A stretch of 64,000 nucleotides of DNA from Haliotis rufescens. Its lineage: Eukaryota. Positions 10,933 through 64,000 of this stretch are shown here, piece by piece (within the stretch, counting starts at the first letter, position 1; the number at the start of each line of letters is the position of its first letter). The DNA lies in NCBI RefSeq assembly GCF_023055435.1, contig NW_025964035.1, positions 868,001 through 932,000 of the forward strand. Reading direction: 5' to 3'. Both the position numbers and the translations under genes were made by a program. The notes under the pieces were generated by a model. It was not told where the DNA came from. It did no database searches and saw nothing but the letters and a program-made list of their open reading frames with translations.

Positions 10933-13900
10933 TTAGAGGAGGCTAAGTAAGAATGGATCTGGTCCCATGGCATGGTTAGGATCAACCATTTGATATGTAG
11001 AATGATGTGATTCAAATCCAACGCCTATCCCTTGATTTGCACCCAACCCTACATCAGGGCCGTGAAAAGAACCCATATTAGGTGCATGAATGTCCCTCCA
11101 TGGGTTTCCAAAACCCACATCCGGGCCAGGGAACGGAGCTGCGTTTCCAAAACCCATATCAGTTGCATGTCTGTCCCTCATTTGGTGTCCCAAACCCATC
11201 TCAGCACCGTGGAACGGACCTGGGTGTCCAAATCCAACATCGGTAGCCATACCCATATCAGGGCCTTGAAGCCGACCTACGTCTCTGAAACCCGTATGAG
11301 TAGCATGGCGATCTGCCATTGGGTGACCAGAACGTGTGTCCATTCCTGCTCCTTGTCTGGAATGTAATGTATCAATAGGTCCTGTACCCATCCCAAGAGC
11401 AGCATCGGCGTGTCCTACACCTGTATCTACAACACCACCAGATGCCTTGTCTGGCCCTAAAGTCTGAAAAGGACGTCCACCCCCTAGCCTCTGAACAGCA
11501 ATTTGAATATCCTGTATGTTACTTTGACCCTGGTTAGCCGTCAGCATGTCCATGGCGGCCTTGTTCTCTGACGCAAATTGAGATCTTGAGGCAGCATCAA
11601 GTCTGAGGTTTCCACCATGCGTGTTAAGACCACTACTATGTCCCTTCTCCATTAATTTATCATTTGCACCTAGCGACTGCGTTATTCTCAGCCTACCCCC
11701 AAACCTGTCAATGTGTGGATCCCTAACGGGACTATTGATGTCCGCAGCACTGATCACTATGGGGAGTCGGAATTTAGTGAGAAGCTCCGCATCAGTAATC
11801 CGACCCCCATCTACTATGTCAGTGACATTCTGTTTACCACTGGTAAACGTAGAACCAGAACGACTATCAAGTCCTTTAGCTTTGTTTAACACGTCCCCAA
11901 CACCGCCTGAAGAACTGTTCTCTGTCAGCATGTCAGGAGACATCACTGATAAGTCTGTGTGTTGTGCATCACTGCCAAGGGCATTGTTCGACAAACTTCT
12001 ACCTTGCTCTGATTGTCTGGTGGGGTCATTTTGACCACCATCCTGTAAAGTATTCCTCAGTGGAACCGAGTCTGCATGGAGATCCTTATTAGAAACTTGG
12101 CCCATAAGCGTGTCTCTGCCACTAACACTTCCCGTGATACTGTCATTAAGACGGTTATTGTTTAATCCCAACTTGGTCACATCTCCAGTGGACTTAGTTG
12201 TTTGAGTCATATCGCTGCCTGTTCTCCCAAGTATTCCATTCTTTAGTGATGTGCCATCATGTGATAATTCCTGGGACAAAGATAATGACCCTTGAGCACT
12301 TCTGCCCATATTTGGTAAAAGGACATCCTTTGCTGGCTGCGTACTCTCTTCATTACCCGTAATTCTGTTCTGGTTTAAATGAAGATCTGTTTTACGGTGA
12401 AAGAAGTTCTTATCAGAAAGAGTCGTTCCTTGTGTCAAAGAATTGCTCCCTACTGTACCAACCTTGGGATCTTTTTGTGTGTCAAATGTCGATAAGGTCT
12501 GTTTTTCCCTCAACAGAGCATCAGGTGATTTTCCCCCGAGGCCAACAGGCGATGTCATTGCAAATTTGGCACCGTTGTTCCCGGTAAGTTTTAGATCCCT
12601 TACCTCTGCGACACCCGGTGTTTCATGGACAGAATTGATCGTGGGTCTCTTTGAAAATATTTTTGTAGTGCTACCAACAGCCGAACTCACAAATCTAGCT
12701 TGATCATTAAAATGAGAGTTCATTCTTGAAGGTGAATGCGTCCCCCATCCGCGTGTGTCTACCCGGGATATCTGTGCCATTCTACTCCTTGGGAAAGATG
12801 GCGACATACTCTGGTGGGAAAAGCTTGACATCCGGTCAGAGGACCTAGGTGAATCCGAAGACATCCTTTGGGAACTATGGTCAAATGATGAGCCAGTGCC
12901 CACAAGTTGATGTCGATCTATGGCCTGCATTGATCTACGAGAGCTACCTGACGTTTCTCCTCGCATAGCGTGAGAATTGAAGTGAGAGTTGGATCTGTCT
13001 GTCATTCTCCAGTTAGGATGTGTCATCATGTCAGAGGAATGAGACATTGTTCTAGACGAACGGGGATTCTCTGAAAATAATGATGCCTCTCTGGAAGGGT
13101 GTGACATCCTTCTGTCTGACATCAGCCCTACATCCCTGAAATCCCTTCTACCACTCTGCAACCGTGCGTTGGCAAAATCCTGGCTCAGTCCACCAGGTTG
13201 TTGGGACATACCTGAGGATACTCTTGTAGGCGTCATCTGATTTGCAGATTGTTTCCTGTCAAATGTAAATCCAGCATGATCAGAGGCAAACTGTGATTGG
13301 CGACTTGTAGCTAGCTGTGTTGCGGACTGAGACAACATTCGTTGTGTTTGACCAAGTTGACTTCCAGCAGGGTCGCCCATTAGGTGAGTACCACCTGAGG
13401 CCTGCATTGCATTAGTTCCAGTACCAGAACCTGAAATCGCTTGACTACTAGCCAGATTAGGTGTCGGAACACCATCCCTTAATATGGCTCTTTGAAACTG
13501 GTTATCAGCAGGCCTGGTCGGAGACGTTCCAAGATCAGTTGATGCCATATTTCCAGCTGAGAAGCGCGCAGTGTCTTGCAATAAGGGATTCGTACCAGTG
13601 CCGGGCATGGACTGACCATGCCCACTGGAACCTCCTAGAAAGGCTCCTGTTTGATCGGCATTAGCAAAGCCTGATTGTTGACCAGAGGAGCCTCTGAGTT
13701 GAGTGTCGGCAATAGAAGAGGATAGGTGACGAGATGACTGCTCCATTCCTGTGATGTGGTTAGTAGGATTAGTCCTGCTCAGTGGATGTTCTCGGAAGCC
13801 AGTACCCATGTCCATCTGTGACGGCGGTCCTCTGTGTGTCAGTCCCATTCTCCTCCGCTCATGCAGTGCCATCTGGTGAGATGTGTGAAGGCCACGCCCA

Positions 13901-14603
13901 CGGTCATGTGAGGATGTTGATCGAGGAGCCACATCGGCAGGGTAGGGTTCAGTTCCCATTCCACTCCGCCCTGGATAATGTCCGCCAAGACCTTGATCAA
14001 ATGCTCCAGGACCAGGGTCGTAAGGTCCAGGTCCACCCACAGACGGATCATAGGGTCCAGACCCTGCCATAGTTTGATCATAGGGCCCTGCTCCCCCGCC
14101 AAGCCTGGGATCATAAGGACCAGGTGGTCCCATACTTGGATCATAAGGACCAGCAGCTCCCATGCTTGGATCATAAGGACCGACTGGTCCCATGCTTGGA
14201 TCATAAGGACCGGATGTCCCCATACTTGGATCATAAGGACCGGGTCTTCCCATACCTGGATCATAAGGTCCGCCTCTTCCCATACTTGGATCATAAGGTC
14301 CAGCACCTCTGGCTGGATCATATGGTCCCGGACCCATGCTGCCCATGCCGCCCATTCCGGGATCTACACTGCCAACTGTACCCATCCCTGGATCGTAAGG
14401 TCCTCTGCTCCTTAGCGGATCATAAGGACCTGGACCAGCCATAGTATTGCCATAGGGGTCAACTGCTCCCATTCTAGGATCATAGGTCGGGGCCTGGTGC
14501 CTGGGGAACATATGAGAAGCAGTCATTGGTTCAGTCAGAGCCGGTGTCAGTGATGCTGGAGCCATGCCAGGCGGAGGCTGAGCCCACATACCAGTAGTAG
14601 CAT
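10933..14603 (-). CDS. Gene B terminal exon (1222 full sense codons): GPYDPSMG repeats, Ser/Arg/Met/His-rich middle, Gly/His/Phe/Met C-terminal repeats
   Basis: 3.66-kb uninterrupted ORF (10933..14589) extended to acceptor cctattgttttacag at 14604; TAA stop at 10933-10935; AATAAA ~210 nt downstream. Confidence 0.92.
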
Positions 14604-17600
14604 CTGTAAAACAATAGGGTATATCTCAAACGATATGCGTATCTTTGATTGAGTATATGTTAATATTTCAAAGAAAAACCTAGCACTGTTTGATTTGATT
14701 TTCGAACAAAAGTGTTGAAGTATTGAAACTTTTTCATCCTGCTGGACGAAATAATAGAGCAAAGAGTTAATTAGATCAATTTAACTAGTGACGCTATAAC
14801 TGATAACTACACATTATACACGTCGTGCACTTAGCTTCAAATTGATACTGATACATAGGGTTCAGGTTCATATATAACGCGGAGGTTCATACATAGAGTG
14901 GAGGTTCATACATAGAGTGGAGGTTCCTACATACAGAAGGGTTCATACATAGAGTACAGGTTCATACATAGAGTGGAGGTTCATACACAGAGTGGAGGTT
15001 CATACATAGAGTAGAGGTTCATACATAGAGCGGAGGTTCATACATAGAGTGGAGGTTCATACATAGAGTGGAGGTTCATACATAGAGTTGAGGTTCATAC
15101 ATAGAGTAGAGGTTCATACATAGAGTGGAGGTTCATACATATAGGGGAGGTTCATACATACAGAGGAGGTTCATACATGCAGTGGAGCTTCATACATAGA
15201 GCGGAGGTTCATACATAGAGCGGAGGTTCATACATAGAGCGGAGGTTCATACATAGAGCGGAGGTTCATACATAGAGTGGATGTTCATACATAGAGTGGA
15301 GGTTCATACATAGAGCGGAGGTTCATACATGGAGTGGAGGTTCACACATAGAGTGGAGGTTCACACATAGAGTGGAGGTTCATACATACAGAGGAGGTTC
15401 ATACATGGAGAGGAGGTTCATACATAGAGTGGAGGTTCATACATAGAGCGGAGGTTCATACATAGAGCGGAGGTTCATACATAGAGTGGAGGTTCACACA
15501 TAGATTTGAGGTTCATACATAGAGTGGATGATCATACATAGAGCGGATGTTCATTCATAGAGCGGGGGTTCATACATAGAGTGGAGGTTCACACATAGAG
15601 TGGAGGTTCATACATACAGAGGAGGTTCATACATGGAGTGGAGGTTCATACATAGAGCGGAGGTTCATACATAGAGCGGAGGTTCATACATAGAGCGGAG
15701 GTTCATACATAGAGTGGAGGTTCACACATAGAGTGGAGGATCATACATAGAGCGGAGGTTCATACATAGAGTGGATGTTCATACATAGAGCGGGGGTTCA
15801 TACATAGAGTGGAGGTTCATACATAGAGTGGATGTTCATACATAGAGCGGAGGTTCACACATAGAGCGGAGGTTCATACATAGAGTGGAGGTTCACACAT
15901 AGATTGGAGGTTCATACATAGAGTGGATGTTCATACATAGAGCGGGGTTCATACATAGAGTGGAGGTTCATACATAGAGCGGAGGTTCACACATAGAGCG
16001 GAGGTTCAGACATAGAGTGGATGTTCATACATAGAGCGGAGGTTCATACATAGAGCGGAGGTTCACACATAGAGTGGAGGTTCAGACATAGAGTTGATGT
16101 TCATACATAGAGCGGGGTTCATACATAGAGTGGATGTTCATACATAGAGCGGAGGTTCACACATAGAGCGGAGGTTCATACATAGAGTGGAGGTTCACAC
16201 ATAGATTGGAGGTTCATACATAGAGTGGATGTTCATACATAGAGCGGGGTTCATACATAGAGTGGAGGTTCATACATAGAGCGGAGGTTCACACATAGAG
16301 CGGAGGTTCAGACATAGAGTGGATGTTCATACATAGAGCGGAGGTTCATACATAGAGCGGAGGTTCACACATAGAGTGGAGGTTCAGACATAGAGTTGAT
16401 GTTCATACATAGAGCGGGGTTCATACATAGAGAGGATGTTCATACATAGAGCGGAGGTTCACACATAGAGCGGAGGTTCATACATAGAGTGGATGTTCAT
16501 ACATAGAGTGGAGGTTCATACATAGAGCGGAGGTTCATACATAGAGCGGAGGTTCACACATAGAGTGGAGGTTCATACATGGAGTGGAGGATCATACATA
16601 GAGTGGAGGTTCATACATAGAGTGGAGGTTCACACATAGAGCGGAGGTTCATACATAGAGTAGAGGTTCATACATAGAGTGGATGTTCATACATAGAGCG
16701 GGGGTTCATACATAGAGCGGATGTTCATACATAGAGCGGGGGTTCATACATAGAGTGGAGGTTCATACATCGAGCAGAGGTTTCTACATTGAATGTAGCT
16801 CGCAATGTGACGTTCATACACCTATTGAAGGGCGAGGTGGAAAAGCCGTACTTCGTATATTCATGATATTTTAGAATTATTCGCGTGTCAATACATACCG
16901 AAGCATGGTATCCTGCAGCCAGCTGGGGGAAATAAGAAAAATTTGGTAAACAACATATGAAATGGATCTGTATGTACATACCTAGTCCTAGGTTCACACT
17001 GATTATGTCAACACACACGTGAGATTAAAACACATGTTGCAATGTCTCGTAGTAGGAGCCGAGCATCAATCATTCCTGCTTACTTGAAGGTATGTATGGG
17101 TATGTTTGTGTGTGTGCGTGTGTGTATGTGTGTGTGTGTGTGTGTGTTTATGTGTATGCTTNNNNNNNNNNNNNNNNNNNNNNNNNNNNNNNNNNNNNNN
17201 NNNNNNNNNNNNNNNNNNNNNNNNNNNNNNNNNNNNNNNNNNNNNNNNNNNNNNNNNNNNNNNNNNNNNNNNNNNNNNNNNNNNNNNNNNNNNNNNNNNN
17301 NNNNNNNNNNNNNNNNNNNNNNNNNNNNNNNNNNNNNNNNNNNNNNNNNNNNNNNNNNNNNNNNNNNNNNNNNNNNNNNNNNNNNNNNNNNNNNNNNNNN
17401 NNNNNNNNNNNNNNNNNNNNNNNNNNNNNNNNNNNNNNNNNNNNNNNNNNNNNNNNNNNNNNNNNNNNNNNNNNNNNNNNNNNNNNNNNNNNNNNNNNNN
17501 NNNNNNNNNNNNNNNNNNNNNNNNNGTGTATCGTTTAAATTTTGCACTTAACGTAGATTTTTTTAAACCAACCACATTTGTTTGCAAGACATGCAGGATA

Positions 17601-20600
17601 TCCTGACAAAACGTGTTGTCACAAGAAAAAACCTGTTTGGCTCCTCCTCTGACAACAATTGTTAAACATTGGATGCTGAACCCAAGTCACGCACTCACTC
17701 TTTATTTGCACATACGAGTAGGTGAAGATACTGGCATCTTTAGTGAACCCACATTCAGGAAGAACTACCACCAAACGCTCTGGCCTTCATGAATTATTAT
17801 GTATTGCTTATAAGAGTAATTATTTTTGTATAGTGTGACAGTCAATATTTTGTATTGTGTATGACAGTAATTATTTATTTATTGCGAGTAAGATTTATCA
17901 TTTGTGTATTGCGTGTGACAGTAATTATTATGTATTGTATGTGACAGAAATTTTGTATTTCGAGTAAGAGTAACTATTTATGCATTGTGTTTGAGAGTAA
18001 TTATTCATGTATTGGGTGACAGTTACTCTTTATATATTGCATGTGAGAGTGATTATTTATGTATTGCATGGAAGAGCAATTATTTATGTATTGTGTGTGA
18101 CAGTAACTCTTTATATATTGCAAAAGAGAGTGATTATTTATGTATTGCGTGAAAGAGAAATTATTTATGTATCGTGTGTGAAAAGTAATTATTTATGTAT
18201 TGTGTGTGAGATTAATTCTTTATATATTGCGTGTGAGAGTAACTATTTACGTATTGCGTGTGAGATTAATCATTTATGTATTGTGTGTGACAGTTTCACT
18301 TAATATGTTGCTTGTGAGAGTAACTATTTATGTATTGCGTGTGAAAGTAATCATTTATGTATTGTGTGTGACAGGAACTCTTTATATATTGCTTTTTAGA
18401 GTAATTATTCATGTATAGCGTGTGACAGTAATTATTCATGCAATGTGTGTGACAATAATTTTTTTATATATTGCTTGTGGTAGTAACTATTTATGTATTG
18501 CGTGGAAAAGTAATTATTTATGCATTGCGCGGAAGAGTAATTATTTATGTATATTCATGGAAGAGTAATTATTTTTGCATTGTGTGACAGTCATAATTTA
18601 TGCATTGCGTGGAAGAGTAATTATTTTGTGCCAGTCATTATTTATGTATTGCGTGGAAGAGTAATTATATTTTGTATTGTGACAGTAATAATTGATGTAA
18701 TGCGTTGAAGAGTAATTAGAGTAATTATTTATGTATGGTGTGGAAAAGTAATTATTTATGTATTGCGAAAAAGAGTACTCATTTATGTATTACGTGTAAG
18801 AGTTATCATATTCTATCTGAAAGGGAACCTTCTCGCACATTTCGTGTCTGTTTGTGTGTTTTCTTTACATTACGAGCAACGTAATATGGGGTACAATGGC
18901 ACACAATCAGCCAAGTCACCGAATTTGACCAGCTGATCCAGTGCAGTGGCCTGTTTACGACAGGTAAAAGAGAGCTGGGACCTATTATTAACATGGCTCC
19001 ACGAGACAGCTCCCCAGTCGTTAGTTAACGTCGTCTAGCGAACATAAAATCACTTACCATCGGCTACTCGATCAGCGACTGCAGTAGCTGAAATGACATC
19101 ACAATATGATTATAGCGTTATCAAAATAACGTTATCTCCAGGAATAACGACTTCTTCAACAGCATGAAGACGTAATTGTCCAATTAGAATGGAGGCTGCT
19201 CAGAACCAATAAAATATCAATATAATTATTCCTACGTTTATGAATTTACTTTATATAGCTCGATGAACGTTTCAATACAAATGCATGACAATATCAATAT
19301 ATATATATGTTGAAAACATCAACGGATATTAATCAATGTATGGCTGTATGTTTATTTACCGAGTTCGGCATTCATGACCTTCATTTTTCCAGCCTTCTTC
19401 TTGGCGTTTCGTATAAAACCTGCACAAGAGGAAAATAATATGAAATAGGTGCATACATGTATTTAAACAATACACTCATACCTTTAGTTTAACAACACAC
19501 TTATACCAGTAGTTTAACAACATCCGTATACCTGAACTTTAACAACACATTTATATATGTAGTTTAAGAACACACTGATACCTGTAGTTTAACAATACAC
19601 TCATACCTTTAGTTTAAGAACACACCCATACCTGTAGTTTAACAACACATTTATACCTGTAGCTTAAGAGCACACTCATACATTTAGTTTAAGAACACAT
19701 TCATACCTGGAGTTTAACAATACATTTATATCTGTAGTTTAAGAACACACTCATACCTGGAGTTTAACAACACATTTATATCTGTAGTTTAAGAACACAC
19801 TCATACCTGGAGTTTAACAACATACTTATACCTGAAGTTTAAGAACACACTCATACCCGTAGTTTAACAACACACTTATACCTGAAGTTATAATATTCGT
19901 TATAACATCGCACAGTGGCACGTAACTGACAGTGGTATATTTAGTTGCCGTTTGCGGTATCATATCAAATAAGCAGAACATTTTGGGCGATGCATCAGCC
20001 CAGATATGTCACCGTACACGGCGACTAAAGACACCATAACGAACTGTCTGGTAACCATATCGTACAACCGTTGACATTAAGGGTCAAAGGGAGACTACTC
20101 TTCAATCCTTAAAGGCCAAATCTTGTTGAAAATTGTAACTATTATCTTTAACAATAAAGTTACGTGATCTCAGAAATGATTAATGTCCTTGCACATAACA
20201 ATTAATGATATAAAAACACAAAACAGTGTCGAATAAGGAATTTATGTACCAGAAGTTTCATGTGAAATATGTGAGGTGTGTGTTGGAAAATCCAAGATGG
20301 CTGTTGGTATACGGTCTAATATTAGTAACAACCATCTTGCATATTTACTGACGATTTTGGGGCTCATGTGGGGTCAGTAGTTCTGCTCACTGATTGGTCA
20401 ATTTCACTTTAAGGCATAATAAACAATATAAACTGACATTTGTACTTAATAATTGGGATTATTTTCCAACTGTAACTCACGTGACACAACACAACCTGAT
20501 GCAGGTCGTGAACCTTATGGCGTGTCCCTTTGGTATGATTGTGCACCTAGTTCTGTAAAACACCGACTAACAGAACTTCTTTGAGAGGCATTTAGATTTT

Positions 20601-23600
20601 TGTTTGTTTGTTGTTTAACGCCGCACTCAGCAATATTCCAACTATATGAAGGCGGTCTGTAAATAATCGAGTCTGGACCAGACAATCCAGTGATTGATAT
20701 CATAAGCATCGACCCACGCTATTGGAATACGGTGACACACTGAGGCATTTAGAAGTTAGAGTACTAAGTAAGGATATGATATATTGATGAACAACTTCTT
20801 TATCACAATTAGCAGCGACGTTTCGGTGAAGGTTCTGACACTGTTACCAAGCAAGTGGTGTCCAGAGTATGGTTAACAAGTTCTTATAACAGGCCAACAT
20901 TGACTTAGTTTTCAAGCGAAGTAACAGCATTCAGAACACCATTAATGCAACAGGAACACCACTATTCATCCACAAGCAAGACCTATCAGGAGCAGTGTAC
21001 CACATTCCTCGCAATTGTGGACAGGTGAGGTGAGGTGAAATGGGGTTTAACGTCGCGTCCAAGATTATTGCACTTATATAGCGACGTGCATGCACGCGTG
21101 TGTGTGTGTGTGGCTGCTTGTACTAGTCCGGACTGATGCCAATTTATAGTGCTAGCACACTGAGATACCATGCCGCAGTTTAACATAAATACCCCACTCA
21201 GACACAGTATACTGACTGCGAGCCGACCAGTTCTTGTTTTAGCCCCTTAATGCCGAGCGCCAGGCAGGGTAACAACAAGTACCATCTTTTAACGTCTTTT
21301 TGGTATGACGCGGCCGGGGATCAAACCCCGGGCCTTCCGCTCTACCACTAGACCACGGAGGCGGTCTAATTTTGGACAGGCTGATATTGGCGAAACATCA
21401 AGGCTCCTCAAAACACGAAATAAAGAACATCAAAATTGACTCAACGTCAGCTCTATCAGACCATATCCGTGGCAACCCAAGCTACAACGTCCCGTGAGCG
21501 AGACAGATTGCGATTACAATTATCGGGAGACGACCCCTTTAATGCTGCACACCGTTGTGTAGCACGTGCAGTACGTGTTTGCGCTGTTCCTCCTACGTTG
21601 CAGTGGTATGCAACGGAAAAAGCCGAGTGGAACTGAATGTAGATCGGTACTGAGAACAGACATTGACCTCCGTGTGATCTGATTGTACTTACATGCAATG
21701 TTACCCCCGCCGGTCGAAGGAACTGAAATATATACAGGAAAAATGAAGGCCAAGAAAATTTGTTTCCGGCAAAATAAGACCTTCATGAACATGAGTCATC
21801 GGTAATAGTTGTAAGAAAAGTTGGGTTTGCGATTTTCATACGGACGTAGAATAATTTCGCTCTGATTCTCAAGACTCAAGAATGTGGTTTGTATTGAATT
21901 AAAACATACTTAATCACACACCCATTGGTTCAAATAATACCTATGAAATTTAAGTAGCATGTGTTGTTGCAATGTGTCATATCGTGATATGATCAATCAG
22001 AACATGAAGATATTTACCTTTGCGTTTGAGTATGTGATCGTAAATGATGTACATTGCTTACATTTCGATGATCGCCCCTTTTTAACCTTACGTTCAGAAA
22101 TAGAAACACTTACTTTCTCCTCCGCCTGAAACATAAATGAGTTGATGTTGTATTGTTCATAACAATCAGTACCGTCATAGTTATAGTTATCATCATCATC
22201 ATCATCATCATTACCAGTTAGTGTCGTAGCATGATGCAATTTTCATTTCTGATCTCTGCAGTATGATATTGCTTCCGTTCTTTGAATGTCGTAACTCTAA
22301 TTACAACTCATAAGATATTTAAAATAGAAATCGAACTGAACTTGCTCTAAACATATACCTTAACTGCCGAGTAAAGAGAGTATACAATTGGAGTGAGTGA
22401 GTTGGGTTTAACGCCGCTCTTAACAGTATTCCAGCTATAGCGCGGCGTGTCAATTTAATGTGGGAGGAAAGCCCGAAGTGATGCAGGTCTGAGACGTTTA
22501 CCACTTCGGTGAAACCCATGAGCATCGGTGTGGTGCTGACAAACCTTGAAACATAATCGGGGCGAACCGGGATTCGAACCCACAATCATTAGTTTCTGGC
22601 GTGCCCAAGGGACGCAACTCTGTATTGTTTGTTTGTTTCAGTTGTGTATACTTTCTTTTGTACCACACTGTACACCCACCGTTAAGGAAGCTTGTGATAG
22701 CCAACTGCACCTTGTCAGCTGAAACAGCAAACATCAGAAGATATATTTCCAGCCCACTATTTGCTTAATGACAAGCACTGCAGGTTGAAAAGTCAACATT
22801 AGTTTGAAAAATTCTAACTTACTGTGACAACATGCATTGTATGAAATACGTCCCTTAAAGACTTCAATTAAACATTTAAGAATATTATGCCATCCTGCTG
22901 CAGTGACAATGCTAAATGTTAGTATGTGTTCAGACACGAAGTGCCAGGATTTGTTTATTTGATTATTTGGATAAGCTTTATTTAACTCTGTCCGTTTTTT
23001 TCTACATACTGTAAACTACGGTTATCATGAACTCAAAGGGACCACTAATTTTAGTTCGTTATAACTGCAGTTCGTTATAAGCATATATACAGCATATATA
23101 CACCAAATGGCCGGGCCAAAAATAAACAGTTCGTTATATCCGTCTCTTAAAAGCTTCGACATAAGCGTGTTCGTTATAAACGACATGAACACAACTTCAG
23201 TGGACTAGTCAACTTGGAAGCCCTCTATTTGTATTGTTAATCGTGGCTGCTACATGCATGTAATATAGATTTGTATCATCAGCTTTGGTACCACATCGGT
23301 TCAGTGCTTATGTACTTACCCATCATTTCTTTGGGGCTTGTATTTGCTGTAACATATATATGAACATTAATTCATTGTAAGTTTAGTGATGAATGAGACA
23401 GAAAAACTATTGAATATTTCTGTCAACGCTAAGGTGACAATTTGAAGAAAAGAATATTCCAAAATATTAATTGGTCAGTTGTTATCAAACGCAGTTCGTT
23501 GTGCAGAGATGCGCCTATAATATTGACAGCATGCAATGATTGTTGATTCGAATCCAATGACACCATAACTATGAAACTTGTTCTATTGTACTACATGCAA

Positions 23601-26600
23601 TATTACCAACATTACCACAAATATATTTCGCGATAAATTTCGACTTAGTGACATTCATAATAAAACCCTGTTCCACAAATCGATCTTTGTGCTAGGACTC
23701 TCGTAACTCCCATACTGTAACACAGACTTACGACATTCGTAGCGTAAAATCAGTTTGAGGAACGGCCCTGATATTATTTAATTCCTGAAGCTCAAACATC
23801 AAGATCCGGTAAATGGGGATACTCACGTGGCAATGTGGCTCTGAGTTGTTTTTCTGAAACAGAAATGGCATGTTCAATTTTCGAAATTTTACCAGGTACT
23901 TTTAGATGCGTCATTTGTGGTCCAGTATTTTTTAAATTAAAGAAAACGAATCTGTAAACACTTCATAATGAAGTCCGATATGCTCTTCAAGAAATATAAA
24001 AGAACACCCCTCACCAACTTACCTAAATTCCAGCACATGCCTATACAAAGGAAAATGATAATACGTTAGCATAATTCATACATGTTTCAAATTTGAAATG
24101 TCAGAAAAAATGTAGATTAGCTATGTTTGAGAATGAATCACATACTTCAATTGTCCTCCAGATAATTGAACATTCACAATTAGTCGAATTTCTTCCTCTG
24201 ATTAACATATTATTATAACTGTATTTCTTAAATGATTCAGAACAAAACAAATGTATATCTAATAATTTTTAATCAAATATATTTTTGTGGATATACTTAC
24301 CGTCTAGGGCAAACGGGTTCTCTGAAAACGCAATAAAATGTGATTAAACATGAGACTCCTTGACAACATATGTATGTTATTATATAAACCTAACCTGTGT
24401 GAATACATGTAATTCTGTACAACTTATCAACAGCTTTGTCGACATTTCACCTTAACAGACCTACAAATCATTATGTTTTCGTGAGTAAATGGAGTTACGT
24501 AATAAAATCTGATCCTGGCATGTTCGTTGTCCATATTGAAGATATGTCCATATTTGGTCATACATGTAGGACAAAATTAAACAGCAAAGTTTTTTTTGTG
24601 AATTTATTAAACTTGATATATTTATGATTTCCACTGCGGTGATTGATCACGTACCCCCCGGGTCACCCAACAGATGAGGAGGTATGCCTCCGACTCCGCC
24701 CAGTAAACCGGCCCCGCCCACTGTTCCAGCCCCGCCCATTCCACCGGCTCCAGCCATTCCTCCCGCAGCCGCCATTCCAGCTGATGCCGCTTGACCTGTA
24801 GGATAACAAGATCATTCTTTCAAGTACGTTTTTGTCAAAAACTATATTCCAGGTCAAACATATCCCTTCATAGTTGTAAATATAACGCTATTGACTTTTT
24901 GCCATAAAGGAGCCACGAGTGGTCCAGTCCTCTAATGCACCGCATTTCGCTGTAAAGAGTTGCTTCCCAGGGTGCGTTGCTAAAAGCCAATCGCTTGCAA
25001 GCGATGTACAGCGATTCGCCTTACAATGGTACGCTAACTTCCAGCCGCTTGCAATTGCAACAATCGCTGGCAAAATCGCTTCGTTCTCAAACCAAAATGG
25101 CGGCTGAGTTTGACAGCGGAACAAGAAATTCTTGCCTGGATTAGTTTGGAAATTGGCAGCTCACATCGCACCTTCCTTAGTCCGCTCTACATCTTCAAAG
25201 TAGTCATAAATTCATCGAGCGACTTTTATTACGTTCTTCATTTGGGCAAGGCAACCAAGCGGTAGTTCCGCCGCCATTTTGGAAAAGTGCGTAAGCACGG
25301 GGGTGAGCTAAATTTGCTTACTCCAAGCGATTCGTTGCTTGTAACGCGCCCCAAGTGTCTTGAGTGTAAGGAGTAAAGCTAACCAAATCAACTGACAGAG
25401 ACTGGTGATGCCATTGTGATGTCACTGGAACCGATTACGTCATAATAATCTCCAAGCACAGTGATGCAATTTAATTGTTGCAATATCTCCCAGTTTGGTT
25501 AATTGCACGTCATCGTAGCACAACGATCCTCATAATATCAATCACGGGTTTGTCTAGCCTCGACCATGGTGTGGGCTAACAAACAAAACAAACAAACCTT
25601 TCCTTTAGCTTACCTGGAGGAGGAGCCATTTGGGAGAAACATAATCCTGAAACACAGCGAATACATCATAGTAATTTGCTGGTAAACCAGAATGAGACAA
25701 CACAAAATGTGATTTGGGTAAAAACACAAAACAGATCAGAAATGCATCAATAATATCTATCTGTATATTTCAATGTGGTATGCATGTGTTGCCATCGGGC
25801 CATTTATATCATCGTTAAACTGCCGGGCAGAAGAAAGTATACACCCATGTTTTGTGGTGGCTAATGATGAAAGAATGGTTAATCGATGGTGATATAGTTG
25901 ATAAGGGTATCATATTTCTGTTTTGGAGTGTGTAGTAGCTCGGCGACTGTTTGCAACAGAGTAACGTTTCGATAACGTTTTGTATTTTTTTTTAAACTGC
26001 AAATGTTTATTTCTTTTTCCCGATAGATGAGTTCAATCATTCGATACAACTCATAAAGTTGTTTAATTCATACAATCATAAAGTGTCCGTGTTATAAGTG
26101 AAATTAGACTGAGACACACACAAAACGTTTGTTTAACGTTAACATGAGTATCACTCTGGTTCCAAGTTTCAGTCAAGATCGTGTCTTTGTAACGAGTTGT
26201 TCCTCAGATTCTTTACTCTCCCAATGGTGTTACAAGATCATGGTTTACAGGTATGCGGTACATTACACTGCATTATCGCATCTTGTTCTTAATGATACTC
26301 AAGTTATTGTACTGTCCTTTCCTGACGGGTATTTTAGAAAGTGTACACATATTTCGGATGCATGTTTAAATTGTTGTTGTCACGATATTGCTGAATTACT
26401 GCCGATGTAACTTTAAATCTTAACACACTCACTCACTTCTAATGATACACGCAGTGTATCCTAATACTGATCAAAGCAGCGATAAACCCAACACATTCAC
26501 TCACTCACTCACTTTATGATACGGTGCATAATTGGAAAGAAATGGACTAATTTTCTAGTTCTAGTTCTACCGCCCGCAGTAGATTTTTGTATGTCTTTTC

Positions 26601-27875
26601 GAGTAGAAATAGAAAGGAATATATAGACAGACCTGTACTCATATCAAACATTTAAAAAACCCATCAAAAATACAATCGAAGATGATGTTATTTTAAATTC
26701 TTCTCATCATTACAAATAGGATAAATTAATCCAACTTTAAAAAATAAGCGTGTGGACAATGATGATTTATATTTTTACCAGCAATTAACATGTTGATCTA
26801 AAAGTGAAAGTTGTTTTCTCTAGTAAGAGATATATAGACATTCCACGATGCGTCTGTGAATCCAAATAAGCAAGATATAATATGCCTCCCCCAAAAATGA
26901 TTGAGCGACCATAAGTGCTCTGTAAATTTACAACGTAAACGCTAGACAATAATCAATCTTGATTATCAGCCTAAACAGTAATAATCAAAATAGCGGTAAA
27001 AATTGAATGGAACACTCAAAATCTGTGATAACACCACGTGTCCAATAAAATGGTAAGCATGTCCCTCCCTACCGATAGCACCCGCCTCTCACACAATTTG
27101 CATGATAAAATGTATATGTTTGTAGCTTGACGCCGGACATTAGTGCTCGTACGCGACGGCGGCCTGAGAACAAACCAAACAATCAAGCGACCGATGGACC
27201 ACACAATCAAGTGACCGATGGACCACACCATCAAGTGACCGATGGACCACACAATCAAGTGACCGATGGACCACACCATCAAATGACCGATGGACCACAC
27301 CATCAAGTGACCGATGGACCACACAATCAAGTGACCGATGGACCACATAATCAAGTGACCGATGGACCATACAATCAAGTTGGTTGGTTGGTTTGTTGTT
27401 TAACGCCGCACTCAGCAATATTCCAGCTATATGACGGCGGTCTGTAAATAATCGAGTCTGGACCAGACAATCCAGTGATTGATATCATTAGCATCGATCC
27501 ACCCAATTGGGATCGATGACATGCATCAACCAAGTCAGCGAGCCTGACCACCCGATCCCGTTAGTCGCCTTTTACGACAAGCATAGTCGCCTTTTACGGC
27601 AAGCATGGGTTGCTGGAGACCTATTCTACCCCGGAATCTTCACGGGTCCACAATCAAGTGACACAATAGCGCAAACCCAGAATAGAGAAGACGGAATTGT
27701 CAAGTGCGTGTACATTCTTCCCGAAAATGGCGCACGAGTGTAAGCTGAACGCCCTATATGGTACATGCAAGTCCTTGTCATAAAGCTGACCTGGCAGGAA
27801 CTAAAACGGCTGGTCAGAACAACGTGACAAGCCACACCTACCTGTAAGTGTGAATAGGAAACAGGCAGTGAACAT
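10933..27875 (-). CDS. Gene B: secreted ~1375-aa repetitive low-complexity (Gly/Met/Pro/Ser/His-rich) protein. Coding exons 27842-27875, 25614-25646, 24655-24795, 24301-24321, 24023-24040, 23827-23853, 23320-23346, 22114-22125, 21693-21722, 19360-19419, 19058-19087, 16899-16922, 10933-14603
   Basis: All 12 introns are GT-AG and phase 1. Internal exons of 33,141,21,18,27,27,12,30,60,30,24 nt are all multiples of 3. Spliced N-terminus: MFTACFLFTLTGLCFS-QMAPPPGQAASAGMAAAGGMAGAGGMGGAGTVGGAGLLGGVGGIPPHLLGDPGENPFALDGMCWNLEKQLRATLPPNTSPKEMMGGGEIPSTGGGNIACFIRNAKKKAGKMKVMNAELATAVADRVADAGCRIPCFDATTGMWAQPPPGM..., which joins in frame to the 1218-aa ORF. There is an in-frame stop upstream of the ATG. Confidence 0.8.
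14857..16785. repeat. 19-bp minisatellite (ggaggttcatacatagag[t/c])n, ~100 units
   Basis: Direct inspection; lies in the last intron of gene B. Confidence 0.97.
17162..17525. other. Assembly gap (N run) next to a (GT)n microsatellite
   Basis: N run. Confidence 1.
17790..18805. repeat. Degenerate ~27-bp AT-rich minisatellite (gagtaattatttatgtattgcgtgtga)n
   Basis: Direct inspection. Confidence 0.9.
19460..19890. repeat. 25-bp minisatellite (aacacactcatacctgtagtttaag)n
   Basis: ~17 units. Confidence 0.92.
21023..21366 (-). mobile_element. SINE family 3
   Basis: TSD-like aatt.tggacagg. Confidence 0.88.
24655..24795 (-). CDS. Gene B exon 3 (Gly/Ala/Met-rich)
   Basis: Acceptor gttatcctacag, donor gtacgt, 141 nt; GC-rich coding-like island in AT-rich DNA. 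Confidence 0.8.
24970..25352. mobile_element. Probable old MITE
   Basis: Imperfect inverted ends gggtgcgttgc...aatcgcttg / caagcgatt...gtaacgcgcccc. Confidence 0.5.
27180..27380. repeat. 24-bp minisatellite (aatcaagtgaccgatggaccacac)n
   Basis: ~8 units, followed by a SINE insertion with the acaatcaagt duplication. Confidence 0.95.
27380..27648 (-). mobile_element. SINE family 4
   Basis: Full length, TSD acaatcaagt. Confidence 0.9.
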
Positions 27876-59264: not shown

Positions 59265-62200
59265 TCACCAACCTGAAAGAAAAATACATAAACGAAATCA
59301 GTACCATTCAAGAAAAGGATTAAAAAGATTGAACAGTGACATAAGACAAAGTGAGTTTGGCTTAACGCCGCTATGTATTTCATGACGGCATGTCTGCTTG
59401 GAGGGAACAACTCGAAGTGATGCAGATCTTAGACGTTGACCACGCACGAGTAAGCTTGGATGATTCGAATCCCAGATCATTGGTTTGTGGAACACCTAAT
59501 GAACGCAGCTCCTTGAGCATATATATTAACATATATATGTATACACCCTTGTTACCTTATTCCAAATCATGGCATATAGTCTTATATAAAGATGACACAA
59601 ATGGTGTAACATAATTTAGCATTGTAATGGCGTTAGTAGATGGACAGACGGATTCAACATCTATGATGTTATAAGTGGGAAGACTTTTTTATTGGGGGAT
59701 CTACGTTCATATGTTCTTAAAAACGACAATAAATATGTATCTACACTTGTCAACAAACTGTTCTAACACTGCACCGACCTCTTTGAGCCATGGGTTGCTG
59801 TTGGGGGTTTGGCAGCTGTATTCCGAGCGTTCTGAAGAAGGCCGATATGGCGTCGTTCACGAACTGGGTTCTCTGTGGTGCTGGCATTCTTAGAAGTGCT
59901 TCGGCGAGATGGGGGGCTATTTCGGGATCCTTTGAAAAAATAAACATAATAAGAAATTCTGTATAAAATAGCAGCCTTGCTGTCTTCTTAGCCGAAGCCT
60001 TATAATATATGGTTATTATAACGGACACGGTGGGTTCTTTAACGAGCAGGCGAACATGTGAATAATTGGTCTGCAGGAGCGATGGTGTAGGATATGGTTC
60101 CCGTTTTTGGGAACACCTGGAGGTCATCACTGATTTTCAGTGATCCAGTCACATAGAGAATCTCATCCGAGTGTCTTTTGATATCAAATATATCAACACG
60201 AGTTGATAAAAGTGGAAAAATTCCGAGGCTTGCCGAGGATATTTGCAAATTTTATCAACGAGTGTTATCTTGGGGTTAGTGTTAACCCGGGGTTATCTTA
60301 ATGAGGTGAGTGGATGTGTCCTGGGTCCGGACCAACAGTGTTTCATTGTGTATTTACATGATCTCAAAAACCTCAATGAACCACTCACCTGGCTTTGTGG
60401 CATGTTAGCCATATTGGCTCTGAGTCCTTGTTTCTGTGATGGTTGCTGTGGGTGTTGCTGTTGGGGAGGCTGAGGCTGAGGCTGGGGATTTGGAGGCTGT
60501 GGGTAAGGTGATGGACCTTGGTTCTGAGGCTGGTTGGGGAAATGATTATGTTGAGTTGGCATTTGGGAGATCTGTTGGTTGAATGGCAACTGTGTTGGCT
60601 GTGGCTGGGATGGAGGTTGTGGTTGTGGTTGTTGTGATTGATGTTGCTGTGGCTGTTGTGGCTGATGCTGGGGCGGTGTAATCTGGAAGGGATCCTTTCC
60701 CCACGGGGCAGCGTTCTGTGTGCTGGGATCGGGGAATGGCATCGGGGCTCTAGCTGGGGGGGAAGCGGGGGATCCCCATCTGTTTCCCCTTGGAGGTTGT
60801 GGAGAGGGAGGGACATAGAGATGCCCGCCGTTGGGCCCGTTGCCTTGTGGTCTTCCATTTCCCATACCGCTCGGTTTCTGACCTCCCACGGGATTTTGCA
60901 GTAGGTTTACAATACTTCCCATAACATTTTGCATATTGTTCCCAGCTTTGTTAGGATTTCCCATACCGTTGTTAGGATTTCCCATACCGTTGTTAGGATT
61001 TCCCATACCGTTGTTAGGATTTCCCATACCACCCATTGGGTTCCCCATGCCATTCATTGGGTTCCCCATGCCATTCATGGGATTTCCCATTCCACCCATC
61101 GGATTTCCCATTCCGCCCATCGGGTTGCCCATACCACCCATCGGGTTGCCCATACCGCCCATACCACCCATCGGGTTGCCCATACCGCCCATCGGGTTTC
61201 CCATACCACCCATCATGTTTCCTAGAGCAGCCAGAGGATTTGCCATTGGTCCCATAGGATTCACCCCGCCGTTCATCGCTGCAAACATGCCCATCATGCC
61301 AATCTTACGAGGTCCCCGAAGAGCTGTAAACAAATAAATATGAGTTAGACAAACGTAGTTGTAACTAGTGAGTGAGTGAGTAGTTTTGTTTCACTCCGCT
61401 TGGAATCTTTTTTCAGTTACTTCATTGCGTGGCAGTTTTAACTTGTACCACATGTTCCCGTGTTATTTTTCAGTTGACTTGCCGTTGCATGTGTTTGTGA
61501 CGAGCACCACCAGTGAGACAGGATACACTCACCTTTTCGCGAACACCTGGTATCATTACTATTTGATAGTGATCCATAAGCACATGCTCATGTTCATGAA
61601 AAAGTCGGAATCGTACAATCAACAGATTTATGCAGAGATTTCTATTGCATATGGAAAGGGATTTGGCGCTTTATTCCAACGAGATTCACTTTTGTGAAAC
61701 ACAAACTTTGGTACAATGTTGCTACAAAACGGACCCGGGATTCAAACCCGCGACCACTGCACAGATAATTAGGGCCTTAGACGATTGAGCTAACCTTGCC
61801 TATTTGAATATGAATCATTACTGTATTTCTATTTCAGTGAGTGAGTGAGTGAGTATGGTTTTACGCCGCTTTTAGCAATATTCCAGCAATATCACGGCGG
61901 GGGACACCAGAAATGAGTTTCACACATTGTACCCATGTCGGGAATCGAACCCGGGTCTTCGGCGTGACGAGCGAACGCTTTAACCACTAGTCTACCCGAC
62001 CGCCCCTTCTATTTCAGATTATAAAATTAACGAAAGAAAGCACGTCCATACTTACGATCACAAGCAATATTACAGCCGGCACCTGAAAGAAACAATAAAT
62101 AATCATAATCATAGTCAGAGGAAGCGTATGTAACTCAGACAACTTCAAATGAAGTTAAAGAACACCCGATTAATTCACTTTAATATGATTACTACATATT

Positions 62201-62709
62201 GCCATGACTTCAATTCAGTGCTATATAAGTTGGTCATCAGAGCCAAGTCCAACAAGACTCCTTTTGCATGTATAGGTGAGTGAGTATATGTTTAATGTGT
62301 AGCAGTCAGGTACTGCTATATAATGGCGGCAAACCAGTGGTTATGGTCAACTCCTTAGCGTTATGATCTGGTACAATCAGAGAGTTCGTACACTGGGGCC
62401 ATCGAGTCTGGTTGTTGAATCATCATGTAATAATGCAAAACGCGAATACCTGGTGTCATCACTATTATTGATTTATAAACAAATGCTAATAATAAAGTCG
62501 AAATCGTACAAGGGGCTCTGCTTTTAAATTTCTTAAGGAAACGGTTATATCTCATTGAATTACGTTATATGTATGTTAAATAATACATATTAGTGTGTGT
62601 CAACTTACCATCAACGAGATCAGAGAATGCTCCGGCTGTGAAAAAAAATTAAAATGTTAATAATAAAGACTTTTATATATTTTTCTACATATTTCGACAC
62701 GACACACGT

Positions 62710-62750
<41 letters not shown>

Positions 62751-63000
62751 GATCATCTTCATGATGTTATCTGTGGATATCTGGGCAACCACAAGCTAAT
62801 TTAAAAAGAATGAAGGAGTGAACAAATGAGTGGCATGTCATCATGATTCGAACCCATGATTTGAACCAACGTATGACTTTAAACGGTTGGACATAAAATA
62901 AGTATGACATGGCCATGATCAAAAGAACTACAACTGCAGCAAGAACACAATAGACTGAGATGCCGTAGAGTTTACGTACCGACTTCCATTGGACTCCGGT
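59265..63000 (-). CDS. Gene D (5' incomplete): Gly/Met/Asn- and Pro/Gln-rich low-complexity protein. Coding exons 62980-63000, 62609-62635, 62056-62082, 60389-61323, 59779-59929, 59265-59272
   Basis: GT-AG junctions in consistent phase. Peptide: ...RSPMEVAGAFSDLVDGAGCNIACDPLRGPRKIGMMGMFAAMNGGVNPMGP...(GMGNPxx)x12...PQ-rich...QSQ|DPEIAPHLAEALLRMPAPQRTQFVNDAISAFFRTLGIQLPNPQQQPMAQR|GW*. AATAAA at 59089-59094. No signal-peptide exon found; it probably lies beyond 64000. Confidence 0.75.
60389..61323 (-). CDS. Gene D large exon: GMGNP(M/N)(G/N) heptads then Pro/Gln tract
   Basis: Within ORF 60293..61333; acceptor ttatttgtttacag, donor CAG|gtgagt. Confidence 0.88.
61837..62006 (-). mobile_element. 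SINE family 1
   Basis: Full length, TSD ttctatttcag. Confidence 0.92.
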
Positions 63001-63659: not shown

Positions 63660-63942
63660 CGAGTGAGTGAGTGAGTTGGGTTTAACGCCGCTTTTAACAT
63701 TATTCAAGTTATATCACGGCGTGTCAGCTTAATGTGGGAGGAAAGCCCCAAGTGATGCAGGTCTCAGACGTTTACCACTTCGGTGAAACCCACGAGCACG
63801 GGTATGGTGCTGACAAACCTAGAAACATAATCGGGGCGAACCGAGATTCGAACCCACAATCATAGGTTTCTGGCGTGCCGAAGTGACGCAACTCTGCACA
63901 GCGAATCGCGGCGCCTTAGACTACTTGGCCACCCGTGCCCCC
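63660..63942 (-). mobile_element. SINE family 2
   Basis: Full-length copy. Confidence 0.9.
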
Positions 63943-64000
63943 TTGTGTTTCTGAGCTCGAATTGCTGAGATGCTGGCGATTTGCAATCTCGAAACATTGA

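What the first reader, a model, noticed from the sequence alone, without database searches (positions are those of the whole stretch)
16899..24321. Small 4-Cys module built from micro-exons and shared between genes B and D
Seen in sequence: gene B micro-exons spell ENPFALDGMCWNLEKQLRATLPPNTSPKEMMGGGEIPSTGGGNIACFIRNAKKKAGKMKVMNAELATAVADRVADAGCRIPCFD. These hold the only Cys I find in the mature protein. The last three exons align exon-for-exon with gene D: MNAELA/SPMEVA, TAVADRVAD/GAFSDLVDG, AGCRIPCF/AGCNIACD, and each set sits directly before the large low-complexity exon. An NIAC motif also occurs in B exon 9. Inference: an undescribed helical, disulfide-bonded domain (oligomerisation or cross-linking) anchors otherwise disordered chains.
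Basis: partly seen in the sequence, partly recalled or inferred. Interest (0 to 1): 0.8.

Follow-up and report, generated by a model that had tools for sequence, protein, structure and literature searches.

The report
Shared cysteine head of abalone shell proteins
Two neighbouring red-abalone genes for mostly disordered shell-matrix proteins share a roughly 97-residue, four-cysteine head built from tiny exons, found only in abalones and overlooked when the proteins were catalogued, with fold and role still untested.

Summary
Gene B (minus strand) has ten, not nine, consecutive phase-1 micro-exons of 12-60 nt.

- **Gap:** the assembly gap lies inside an intron. RefSeq models, orthologues and a shell-derived tryptic peptide all join its flanking exons directly.
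- **Cysteines:** the mature B protein has exactly four Cys, all in this 97-residue block.
- **B-D similarity:** it is significant only over the last 19 residues (p about 2-4e-4). Shared intron positions, an 18-nt first-Cys exon and a split second-Cys codon support paralogy.
- **Constraint:** the block is 86-90% identical between species with no indels, against 55-82% with many indels elsewhere. It is constitutive in all 14 D isoforms.
- **Relatives:** no Pfam, PDB or other relative was found among 1.84 billion proteins.
- **Prior knowledge:** both proteins are already catalogued. Their H. laevigata orthologues (idb_3591, nacre-enriched; idb_20008, prismatic-enriched) were reported in 2018 as disordered shell proteins, and peptides from the block were recovered from shell.

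Fold, disulfides and function remain untested. Both AlphaFold models were of low confidence.

The parts
27842..27875 (-). Gene B exon 1: start codon and first half of the signal peptide (MFTACFLFTLT)
   Evidence: matches P0009 residues 1-11; GTAGGT donor
25614..25646 (-). Gene B exon 2: end of the signal peptide and start of the mature protein (G)LCFSQMAPPP(G)
   Evidence: Gene D has an equivalent split signal-peptide exon (AGLFCHVLSQ) beyond the window
24655..24795 (-). Gene B exon 3: Gly/Ala/Met-rich spacer ending ...IPPHLLGDPG
24301..24321 (-). Module exon 4, 21 nt, (E)NPFALD(G)
   Evidence: AG/GTAAGT, phase 1-1, in P0009 at residue 71
24023..24040 (-). Module exon 5, 18 nt, MCWNL: first Cys (Cys79)
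   Evidence: Gene D has an 18-nt exon ICAAL with Cys at the same codon
23827..23853 (-). Module exon 6, 27 nt, KQLRATLP
23320..23346 (-). Module exon 7, 27 nt, NTSPKEMM (conserved N-x-S sequon)
   Evidence: The orthologous peptide ASLPANASPK was seen unmodified in shell
22680..22718 (-).
   Evidence: A shell peptide crosses it
22114..22125 (-). Module exon 9, 12 nt, GGE
   Evidence: Crossed by the shell peptide IQMAITSYLNGGGEIPSTGGGNIACVIR
21693..21722 (-). Module exon 10, 30 nt, PSTGGGNIA; its last base is the T of the second Cys codon
   Evidence: T|GT split, the same as in gene D
19360..19419 (-). Module exon 11, 60 nt, (C)FIRNAKKKAGKMKVMNAEL: second Cys (Cys128)
19058..19087 (-). Module exon 12, 30 nt, (A)TAVADRVAD
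   Evidence: Shell peptide VMNADLATAVADK(VADAGCR)
17162..17525 (.). Assembly gap inside intron 12; not filled
   Evidence: Its flanking exons are joined directly in all models and in a shell peptide
16899..16922 (-). Module exon 13, 24 nt, (A)GCRIPCF: third and fourth Cys (Cys160, Cys164; CX3C)
10933..14606 (-). Gene B exon 14: 1222-codon Cys-free low-complexity exon (GPYDPSMG repeats, Ser/Gly-rich) plus stop codon
   Evidence: identical to P0009 from residue 166
62980..63000 (-). Gene D module exon, 21 nt, RSPMEV
   Evidence: P0003 residue 206
62609..62635 (-). Gene D module exon, 27 nt, GAFSDLVD
62056..62082 (-). Gene D module exon, 27 nt, AGCNIACD: third and fourth Cys. Six further module exons lie beyond the window end, at 64311-66806 in window-extended coordinates (locus L003)
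60389..61323 (-). Gene D large low-complexity exon (GMGNPMG repeats, then a Gln/Pro-rich part)

Best explanation
Genes B and D are paralogous shell-matrix protein genes of red abalone lying in one same-strand cluster.

**Protein layout.** Each protein has a signal peptide, a short disordered spacer, a non-repetitive head of about 97 residues, and then a long low-complexity tail. The head holds the only four cysteines of the mature protein, spaced C-x49/52-C-x26/32-C-x3-C. It is encoded by ten (B) or nine (D) symmetric phase-1 micro-exons.

**Shown here.**
- The exon chains are real. They are reproduced by RefSeq models in four species, and tryptic peptides recovered from H. laevigata shell cross the exon junctions.
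- The head stays on the mature protein in the shell, so it is not a cleaved propeptide.
- The head is the most conserved and only indel-free part of each protein.
- It is never skipped in any of the 14 splice isoforms of D.
- It has no detectable relative outside the genus Haliotis.

**Inferred.**
- The head is the one folded, probably alpha-helical, unit of each protein.
- The final CX3C pair is stapled to the two upstream Cys by two intramolecular disulfides.
- It serves as a docking or self-association handle that positions the disordered tail in the organic matrix.
- Because a nacre-enriched protein and a prismatic-enriched protein carry the same head, its partner is probably a component common to both shell layers, or the head itself.
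For: **Splice sites and phase:**

**Independent models containing the chain:** P0009 (XP_046380125.2, H. rufescens), P0001 (H. cracherodii) and P0002 (H. asinina) for B; P0003 and 13 further isoforms (H. rufescens) and P0004/P0024 (H. rubra) for D.

**Shell proteome, PMC6003135.**
- idb_3591 is the B orthologue: up to 50 peptides, 47% coverage, nacre 0.23-0.90% against prismatic 0.01-0.03%.
- idb_20008 is the D orthologue: prismatic 0.21-1.57%.
- Head peptides recovered include VMNADLATAVADKVADAGCR, IPCFDATTGTWAQ..., IQMAITSYLNGGGEIPSTGGGNIACVIR, IPAVVTQFMGMSIHDICAALTLK, GTGAQSDALDTIIKNR and NPMEVAGAFSDLVDGAGCNIVCDK.

**Cys positions:** four invariant in every orthologue.

**Constraint.**
- B head is 86.5% identical between H. 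rufescens and H. asinina with 0 gap columns. The tail is 54.6% with 218 gap columns.
- D head is 89.8% with 0 gaps, against 70-82% with 26-34 gap columns elsewhere.

**Splicing:** the head is constitutive, and exon skipping occurs only in the upstream Gln/Pro micro-exons.

**Composition:** 44-45% hydrophobic residues plus Cys in the head against 26-27% elsewhere.

**B-D paralogy.**
- 10/19 identities, ungapped, at the C-terminal end, p = 2-4e-4.
- The best and only hhalign hit between the full-length profiles is head to head, aligning three Cys, E = 0.0022.
- Introns sit at identical codons before and after the last 54 nt.
- The second Cys codon is split T|GT in both genes, and the first Cys lies in an 18-nt exon in both.
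- The signal-peptide exons are similar and split at matching points.

**No known domain or relative:**
Against: - Both AlphaFold2 models are of low confidence (pLDDT 41 and 35). The fold, the helices and the Cys pairing are therefore unproven.
- B and D are not significantly similar over the first two-thirds of the head (p = 0.88).
- MAFFT does not align the first Cys of B with the first Cys of D. It offers an alternative register instead, B ENPFALDGMCWN against D AQSDALDTIVKN.
- The hhalign probability is only 13%.
- No direct evidence exists for disulfides, oligomers or any binding partner.
- The conserved N-x-S sequon peptides were detected unmodified, so glycosylation is at most partial.
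Contigs lay on exon-bearing bins and not on unique intron bins, but the junction rows were crowded out by SINE repeats.
Confidence: 0.6

Rival explanations
1. The head is not a folded domain. It is simply a less repetitive stretch whose four cysteines form intermolecular disulfides, cross-linking B and D, with each other or with other matrix proteins, into the insoluble shell framework.
For: - AlphaFold finds no confident fold.
- All Cys of the mature proteins are concentrated here.
- The proteins sit in the shell matrix.
Against: - The even number of Cys, the invariant spacing and the complete lack of indels over about 97 residues suggest a packed unit.
- So does the globular-like composition.
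- Cross-linking alone would constrain only the Cys, not 86-90% of all positions.
Confidence: 0.2
2. The B and D heads are unrelated. The resemblance (AGCxIxC, four Cys, phase-1 micro-exons) is convergence or chance within a cluster whose genes are all built from phase-1 micro-exons.
For: - Pairwise BLASTP gives E = 0.088.
- The N-terminal two-thirds are not similar (p = 0.88).
- The hhalign probability is 13%.
Against: - Shuffle tests give p = 2e-4 to 1.4e-3 for the C-terminal 19 residues.
- Two introns sit at identical codons and a third is one codon off.
- Both genes share the 54-nt total for the last two exons, a split T|GT second-Cys codon and an 18-nt first-Cys exon.
- The head occupies the same place directly before the large exon in both genes, on the same strand and in the same cluster, and the signal-peptide exons are similar.
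- Genome-wide pattern searches find this terminal exon only in B and D.
Confidence: 0.1
3. The four cysteines bind a metal ion (as has been proposed for the four Cys of the abalone nacre protein AP7), or the head is a mineral-interacting surface, rather than a disulfide-stapled protein-docking domain.
For: - Four conserved Cys including a CX3C motif.
- The AP7 precedent is cited in PMC6003135.
Against: - The protein is secreted into an oxidising extracellular space.
- The head has no His, Asp or Glu clustering around the Cys and is not acidic.
- There is no sequence similarity to any metal-binding family.
Confidence: 0.07
4. The head is a propeptide or secretion chaperone that is removed before the low-complexity part enters the shell.
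For: Its position is N-terminal, directly after the signal peptide and spacer.
Against: Head peptides are among the most intense peptides of both proteins in extracts of cleaned shell. VMNADLATAVADK reaches 1.0e10 with 50 spectra, and GTGAQSDALDTIIKNR reaches 3.7e10 with 89 spectra.
Confidence: 0.03

Closest known systems
Haliotis laevigata shell-matrix proteins idb_3591 and idb_20008 (Mann et al. 2018, Proteome Sci 16:11, PMC6003135)
   Same: They are direct orthologues of gene B (nacre-enriched, 1469 aa) and gene D (prismatic-enriched, GMGNPM repeats). The head sequence and all four Cys are the same, and peptides from the head were found in shell.
   Different: The paper lists both as 'uncharacterized' and intrinsically disordered. 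It does not note the shared Cys-containing head, its exon structure, or that the two proteins are paralogues and genomic neighbours.
Pearl-oyster shematrin and KRMP families: shell proteins with conserved non-repetitive ends and fast-changing low-complexity cores (own knowledge, not tested here)
   Same: The general design is the same. They are secreted, come from tandem gene families, and have a small conserved part attached to variable repetitive domains.
   Different: There is no sequence relationship. Those families do not carry this four-Cys head, and nothing is recorded here about micro-exon encoding in them.
Spider-silk (spidroin) N- and C-terminal domains
   Same: They work alike in outline only. 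A small non-repetitive helical terminal domain, with a Cys in the C-terminal one, controls assembly of a long repetitive structural protein.
   Different: No Pfam match, no PDB sequence match, different Cys pattern, and the fold here is unknown.
Schistosome micro-exon genes (MEGs)
   Same: These are secreted proteins encoded by runs of symmetric micro-exons. Exon skipping makes isoforms, as in the 14 isoforms of gene D.
   Different: Here the micro-exons are only about 7% of B's coding sequence. The head micro-exons are never skipped. There is no homology.

Membership tests
Molluscan shell-matrix proteins with repetitive low-complexity domains | N-terminal secretion signal | tested here: met
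   Hydrophobic N-termini MFTACFLFTLTGLCFS / MARLTYSLTVLAGLFCHVLS. The orthologues are labelled 'SSP' in PMC6003135. No signal-peptide predictor was available.
Molluscan shell-matrix proteins with repetitive low-complexity domains | Protein recovered from cleaned shell by mass spectrometry | tested here: met
   Met for the H. laevigata orthologues idb_3591 and idb_20008. Not tested for H. rufescens itself.
Molluscan shell-matrix proteins with repetitive low-complexity domains | Most of the sequence is repetitive or low-complexity | tested here: met
   1222-aa Cys-free exon with GPYDPSMG repeats in B; GMGNPMG and Gln/Pro repeats in D.
Schistosome-type micro-exon genes | Most of the coding sequence lies in symmetric micro-exons (multiples of 3, mostly 36 nt or less) | tested here: not met
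   The exons are symmetric (12-60 nt in B, 18-81 nt in D). But the ten head exons total 288 nt, about 7% of B's coding sequence.
Schistosome-type micro-exon genes | Protein variation generated by skipping of the micro-exons | tested here: inconclusive
   14 D isoforms differ by skipping the upstream Gln/Pro micro-exons. The head exons are constitutive in all of them.
Spidroin terminal domains (Pfam Spidroin_N / Spidroin_MaSp) | Sequence match to the family profile | tested here: not met
   No Pfam family at E up to 10 for P0001 or P0002. No PDB sequence hit.
Spidroin terminal domains (Pfam Spidroin_N / Spidroin_MaSp) | Five-helix bundle fold | tested here: inconclusive
   Two AlphaFold2 models show five helices in the D head, but at pLDDT 41 and 35. 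No fold search was run on such models.
Saposin-like and other catalogued small Cys-stabilised helical domains | Profile match and the family's Cys pattern (six Cys for saposin-like) | tested here: not met
   No Pfam or PDB match. Only four Cys, spaced C-x49/52-C-x26/32-C-x3-C.
Twin CX3C / CX9C helix-hairpin proteins | Two CX3C or CX9C motifs facing each other | tested here: not met
   There is a single CX3C, and the other two Cys are isolated. The protein is secreted, not mitochondrial.
AP7 C-RING-like four-Cys domain of abalone nacre | Sequence similarity to the AP7 C-terminal domain | not tested
The exhaustive profile search with the head did not return AP7-like proteins.

The most novel reading that the evidence does not exclude
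The head is a new fold family that acts as a regulated assembly switch, loosely comparable to spidroin terminal domains. It would keep aggregation-prone disordered shell proteins soluble in the secretory pathway. It would then dimerise or dock on a common scaffold once in the extrapallial space. The same handle would thus deliver different low-complexity payloads to the nacre and prismatic layers.
Probability: 0.12. Interest if true: 0.7.

Novelty: new member of a known kind. Interest (0 to 1): 0.4.

Why it matters
Abalone shell is a long-standing model for biomineralisation, and most of its matrix proteins are written off as featureless disordered chains.

This finding shows that a nacre-enriched protein and a prismatic-enriched protein carry the same small, strongly conserved, cysteine-bearing head. 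That head is encoded by micro-exons with conserved intron positions. It gives a concrete, expressible handle of about 97 residues for asking how such proteins are placed and held in the matrix. It also shows that the two proteins arose by duplication with replacement of the repetitive payload.

The reach is limited. The head is found only in Haliotis, the proteins are already catalogued, and the structure and function are still unknown.

Tried and rejected
**Searches that found nothing.**
- Pfam on the large exons and on full-length B orthologues: nothing.
- PDB sequence search with the head profile: only chance coiled-coil hits, E of 0.046 or worse.
- ESM Atlas: no usable hit.
- Exhaustive HMMER search: only B, D and two repeat proteins (P0007, P0008), whose summed weak repeats are spurious.
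- Third word search with the D head: only H. rufescens and H. rubra D.
- Genome-wide pattern searches for further copies of the terminal Cys exon. The extra hits lack acceptor sites or are minisatellites or GT-rich repeats.
- Literature searches found no later work on these proteins.
- Literal motifs of genes A and C were not found in the H. laevigata supplement.

**Structure prediction.**
- Two AlphaFold2 runs, head alone and full-length D: pLDDT 41 and 35.
- I ran no fold search, because matches to such models are meaningless.

**RNA evidence.**
- Read laying on 18850-24400 was swamped by SINE copies, and the exon-junction rows were not listed.
- Only the depth pattern (exon bins 1-7, unique intron bins 0) is usable.

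**Steps stopped or left out.**
I stopped that step, so no B-first structure model was made.
- I left out the step of joining the window's exons into a spliced protein. I checked exons one by one against database proteins returned by the tools.

**Ideas rejected.**
- That the shared NIAC string is meaningful.
- That the head is a propeptide.
- That N-glycosylation at the conserved sequon is obligatory, because unmodified peptides were seen.

Full report
**Where and what.** The window is G000:C257:868001-932000. The proteins it encodes are named Haliotis rufescens (red abalone) in public records that sit on a contig of the same length, 5,786,140 bases. The finding concerns the minus strand.

**The gap, tested first.**
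- The N run at 17162-17525 lies between gene B exon 12 (19058-19087) and exon 13 (16899-16922), so it is inside an intron.
- Exon 12 ends, and exon 13 begins, in phase 1.
- The RefSeq model of this very gene (P0009, XP_046380125.2) joins the two exons directly as ...VAD-AGCRIPC... So do the H. cracherodii and H. asinina orthologues (P0001, P0002) and the de novo H. laevigata mantle transcript idb_3591.
- A tryptic peptide recovered from shell, VMNADLATAVADKVADAGCR, crosses the junction.
- The letters on both sides therefore belong to one in-frame transcript.

**The observation.**
Each lies between a pyrimidine-rich AG acceptor and a GT donor, and every exon is a multiple of 3 in phase 1-1.
- The acceptor of the large exon is at 14606, so the Cys in the upstream open frame is intronic.
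It has a GTGGGT donor and encodes ADKVQLAITSFLN.
- That exon is in all four B sequences. The shell peptide IQMAITSYLNGGGEIPSTGGGNIACVIR crosses it and also crosses the 12-nt exon GGE.
- The head of B is therefore ten exons (21, 18, 27, 27, 39, 12, 30, 60, 30 and 24 nt, total 288 nt), covering residues 70-166 of P0009.
- P0009 has Cys only at 5 and 14 (signal peptide) and at 79, 128, 160 and 164. The 1222-codon last exon has none. The claim 'only Cys of the mature protein' is correct.

**Gene D.**
- I fetched the DNA beyond the window end and found the annotated protein (P0003, plus 13 further isoforms and two H. rubra proteins).
- D's head comprises nine phase-1 exons (36, 18, 24, 39, 81, 21, 21, 27 and 27 nt, total 294 nt). 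They lie at window-extended coordinates 66806 down to 62056 and map exactly to P0003 residues 133-229.
- It contains exactly four Cys (146, 198, 224, 228), besides one in the signal peptide.

**Are the two heads related?**
- Direct sequence similarity is weak. BLASTP gives E = 0.088.
- A shuffle test shows that only the last 19 residues stand out. ELATAVADRVADAGCRIPC against EVAGAFSDLVDGAGCNIAC has 10 identities with no gap. The score is 48 against 25 +/- 4.5, p = 4e-4, or 2e-4 to 1.4e-3 with Cys held fixed.
- The first two-thirds are no better than random (p = 0.88).
- Profile-profile comparison of the full-length B and D alignments gives a single hit. It is head against head with three Cys aligned, at E = 0.0022 but probability 13%.
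- Gene structure adds independent support:
  - The introns before and after the last 54 nt sit at identical codons, and the one between them is shifted by a single codon.
  - The second Cys codon is split T|GT by an intron in both genes.
  - The first Cys is the second full codon of an 18-nt exon in both genes, [MI]-C-x-x-L.
  - Both heads sit directly before the large exon.
  - The signal peptides are split by an intron and end alike, GLCFSQ and GLFCHVLSQ.
- MAFFT proposes a different register for the front half, aligning B's ENPFALDGMCWN with D's AQSDALDTIVKN. The correspondence of the first Cys is therefore not settled.
- I put paralogy at about 0.85-0.9.
- The shared NIAC string is coincidental. 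It sits at non-homologous Cys, and two D orthologues read NIVC.

**Is it a constrained unit?**
- Between H. rufescens and H. asinina the B head is 86.5% identical with no gap column. The low-complexity exon is 54.6% identical with 218 gap columns.
- The D head is 89.8% identical with no gaps between H. rufescens and H. rubra. Elsewhere D is 70-82% identical with 26-34 gap columns.
- All four Cys are invariant in B of four species and D of three.
- The 14 RefSeq isoforms of D differ only by skipping micro-exons in the Gln/Pro-rich part upstream. The head is present in every isoform.
- The head is 44-45% hydrophobic residues plus Cys, against 26-27% in the rest of each protein.

**What are these proteins?**
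- A literal motif search led to Mann et al. 2018 (PMC6003135).
- Its supplementary sequences show that idb_3591 is the B orthologue and idb_20008 the D orthologue.
- idb_3591 (1469 aa, up to 50 peptides, 47% coverage) is enriched in nacre: 0.23-0.90% of the nacre fractions against 0.01-0.03% of the prismatic fractions.
- idb_20008 is enriched in the prismatic layer, at 0.21-1.57%.
- Both are listed as uncharacterised, secreted and intrinsically disordered. The paper does not mention the shared Cys head, and no later paper in the library cites these entries.
- Head peptides are abundant in shell extracts, so the head is retained in the mature matrix protein.
- The conserved N-x-S sequon peptides (ASLPANASPK, FPNASVVTGFR) were seen unmodified.

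**Is it a known domain?**
- No Pfam family matches at E up to 10.
- There is no meaningful PDB sequence match and no ESM Atlas neighbour.
- An exhaustive HMMER search of 1.84 billion representatives with the B+D profile returned only the B and D clusters. It also returned two multi-repeat proteins whose weak repeated matches add up spuriously.
- Pattern searches of the whole assembly for the terminal Cys exon found only B and D. The other hits lack splice context or are repeats.
- The head is therefore, as far as can be detected, confined to two genes and to the genus Haliotis. Other vetigastropods are poorly represented in protein databases, so this absence carries limited weight.

**Structure.**
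- AlphaFold2 on the head alignment (4 sequences) gave pLDDT 41. On full-length D it gave 35.
- Both models draw five helices in the same places, but at this confidence that is only a hint, so I ran no fold search.
- A B-first model could not be made.

**RNA.**
- Four small contig sets of the same species hold 79-87% of the words of B's large exon.
- Laid on 18850-24400, their contigs give depth 1-7 on the bins that hold exons of 21 nt or more. They give zero on unique intron bins.
- SINE copies dominated the output, and no exon junction was listed.
- This fits spliced transcripts but does not prove them. The protein-level peptides are the stronger evidence.

**Mechanism.**
- Shown: a retained, conserved, Cys-bearing, non-repetitive head on two paralogous shell-matrix proteins that go mainly to different shell layers.
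- Inferred: a small helical fold stapled by two internal disulfides, with the CX3C pair bonded to the two upstream Cys. It would act as a docking or self-association handle for the disordered tail.
- The rivals are intermolecular cross-linking without a fold, chance resemblance, metal binding, and a propeptide role. Each is weighed in its own section, and the propeptide idea is contradicted by the proteomics.

Exons were checked one at a time against proteins returned by the tools.

**Verdict.** The proteins are already catalogued shell-matrix proteins. What is new is recognising their shared, micro-exon-encoded, Haliotis-restricted four-Cys head.

Noticed in passing
window 14851-16782: A 19-nt minisatellite (ATACATAGAGTGGAGGTTC, about 102 copies, 89% matches) fills most of gene B's last intron.
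   Followed up: partly
window 17792-18803 and 19452-19889: Two more intronic arrays: a 27/81-nt repeat (about 31 copies) next to the assembly gap, which is itself preceded by a (GT)n run at about 17100-17160, and a 25-nt repeat (17.5 copies).
   Followed up: partly
window 20580-20710, 21020-21450, 22384-22625: tRNA-like SINE copies in gene B introns draw summed contig depths of 10^4-10^5 in the four runs laid, and a similar element at about 63660-63950 has at least 40 genomic copies at 94-97% identity. They swamp read-laying on this locus.
   Followed up: no
L003/L008 (window-extended 64311-77551) and window 59777-63000: Gene D spans at least 18 kb. Its whole N-terminal half is made of phase-1 micro-exons, and the 14 RefSeq isoforms (502-605 aa) arise by skipping Gln/Pro-rich ones, while the Cys head is constant.
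   Followed up: partly
window 59777-59929: Gene D has a second conserved non-repetitive segment near its C-terminus (DPEIAPHLAEALLRMPAPQRTQFVNDAISAFFRTLGIQLP). It is nearly invariant between species and predicted helical at low confidence. It follows a phase-0 intron, unlike the phase-1 introns upstream.
   Followed up: no
window 10936-10965: Gene B ends in a short conserved tail (...NAMGPDPFLLSL[LI]) that is kept in H. asinina, even though the preceding low-complexity part is only 55% identical.
   Followed up: no
window 6958-9479: A long minisatellite with open frames (repeats of ...QYSQFNAMLTIFTSQYTV...) lies downstream of gene B. It is probably intronic or intergenic, not coding.
   Followed up: no
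L009 (G000:C201:3231800-3241799): A minisatellite whose frame reads GCFIACYSDSASLDT repeatedly sits beside retrotransposon pol-like open frames. It mimicked the Cys-exon pattern by chance.
   Followed up: yes
window 40222-42931: Gene C's Ser/Thr/Ala-rich mucin-like exons have no Pfam match. Literal motifs from them were not found in the H. laevigata shell proteome supplement, so whether gene C is also a shell protein is open.
   Followed up: partly
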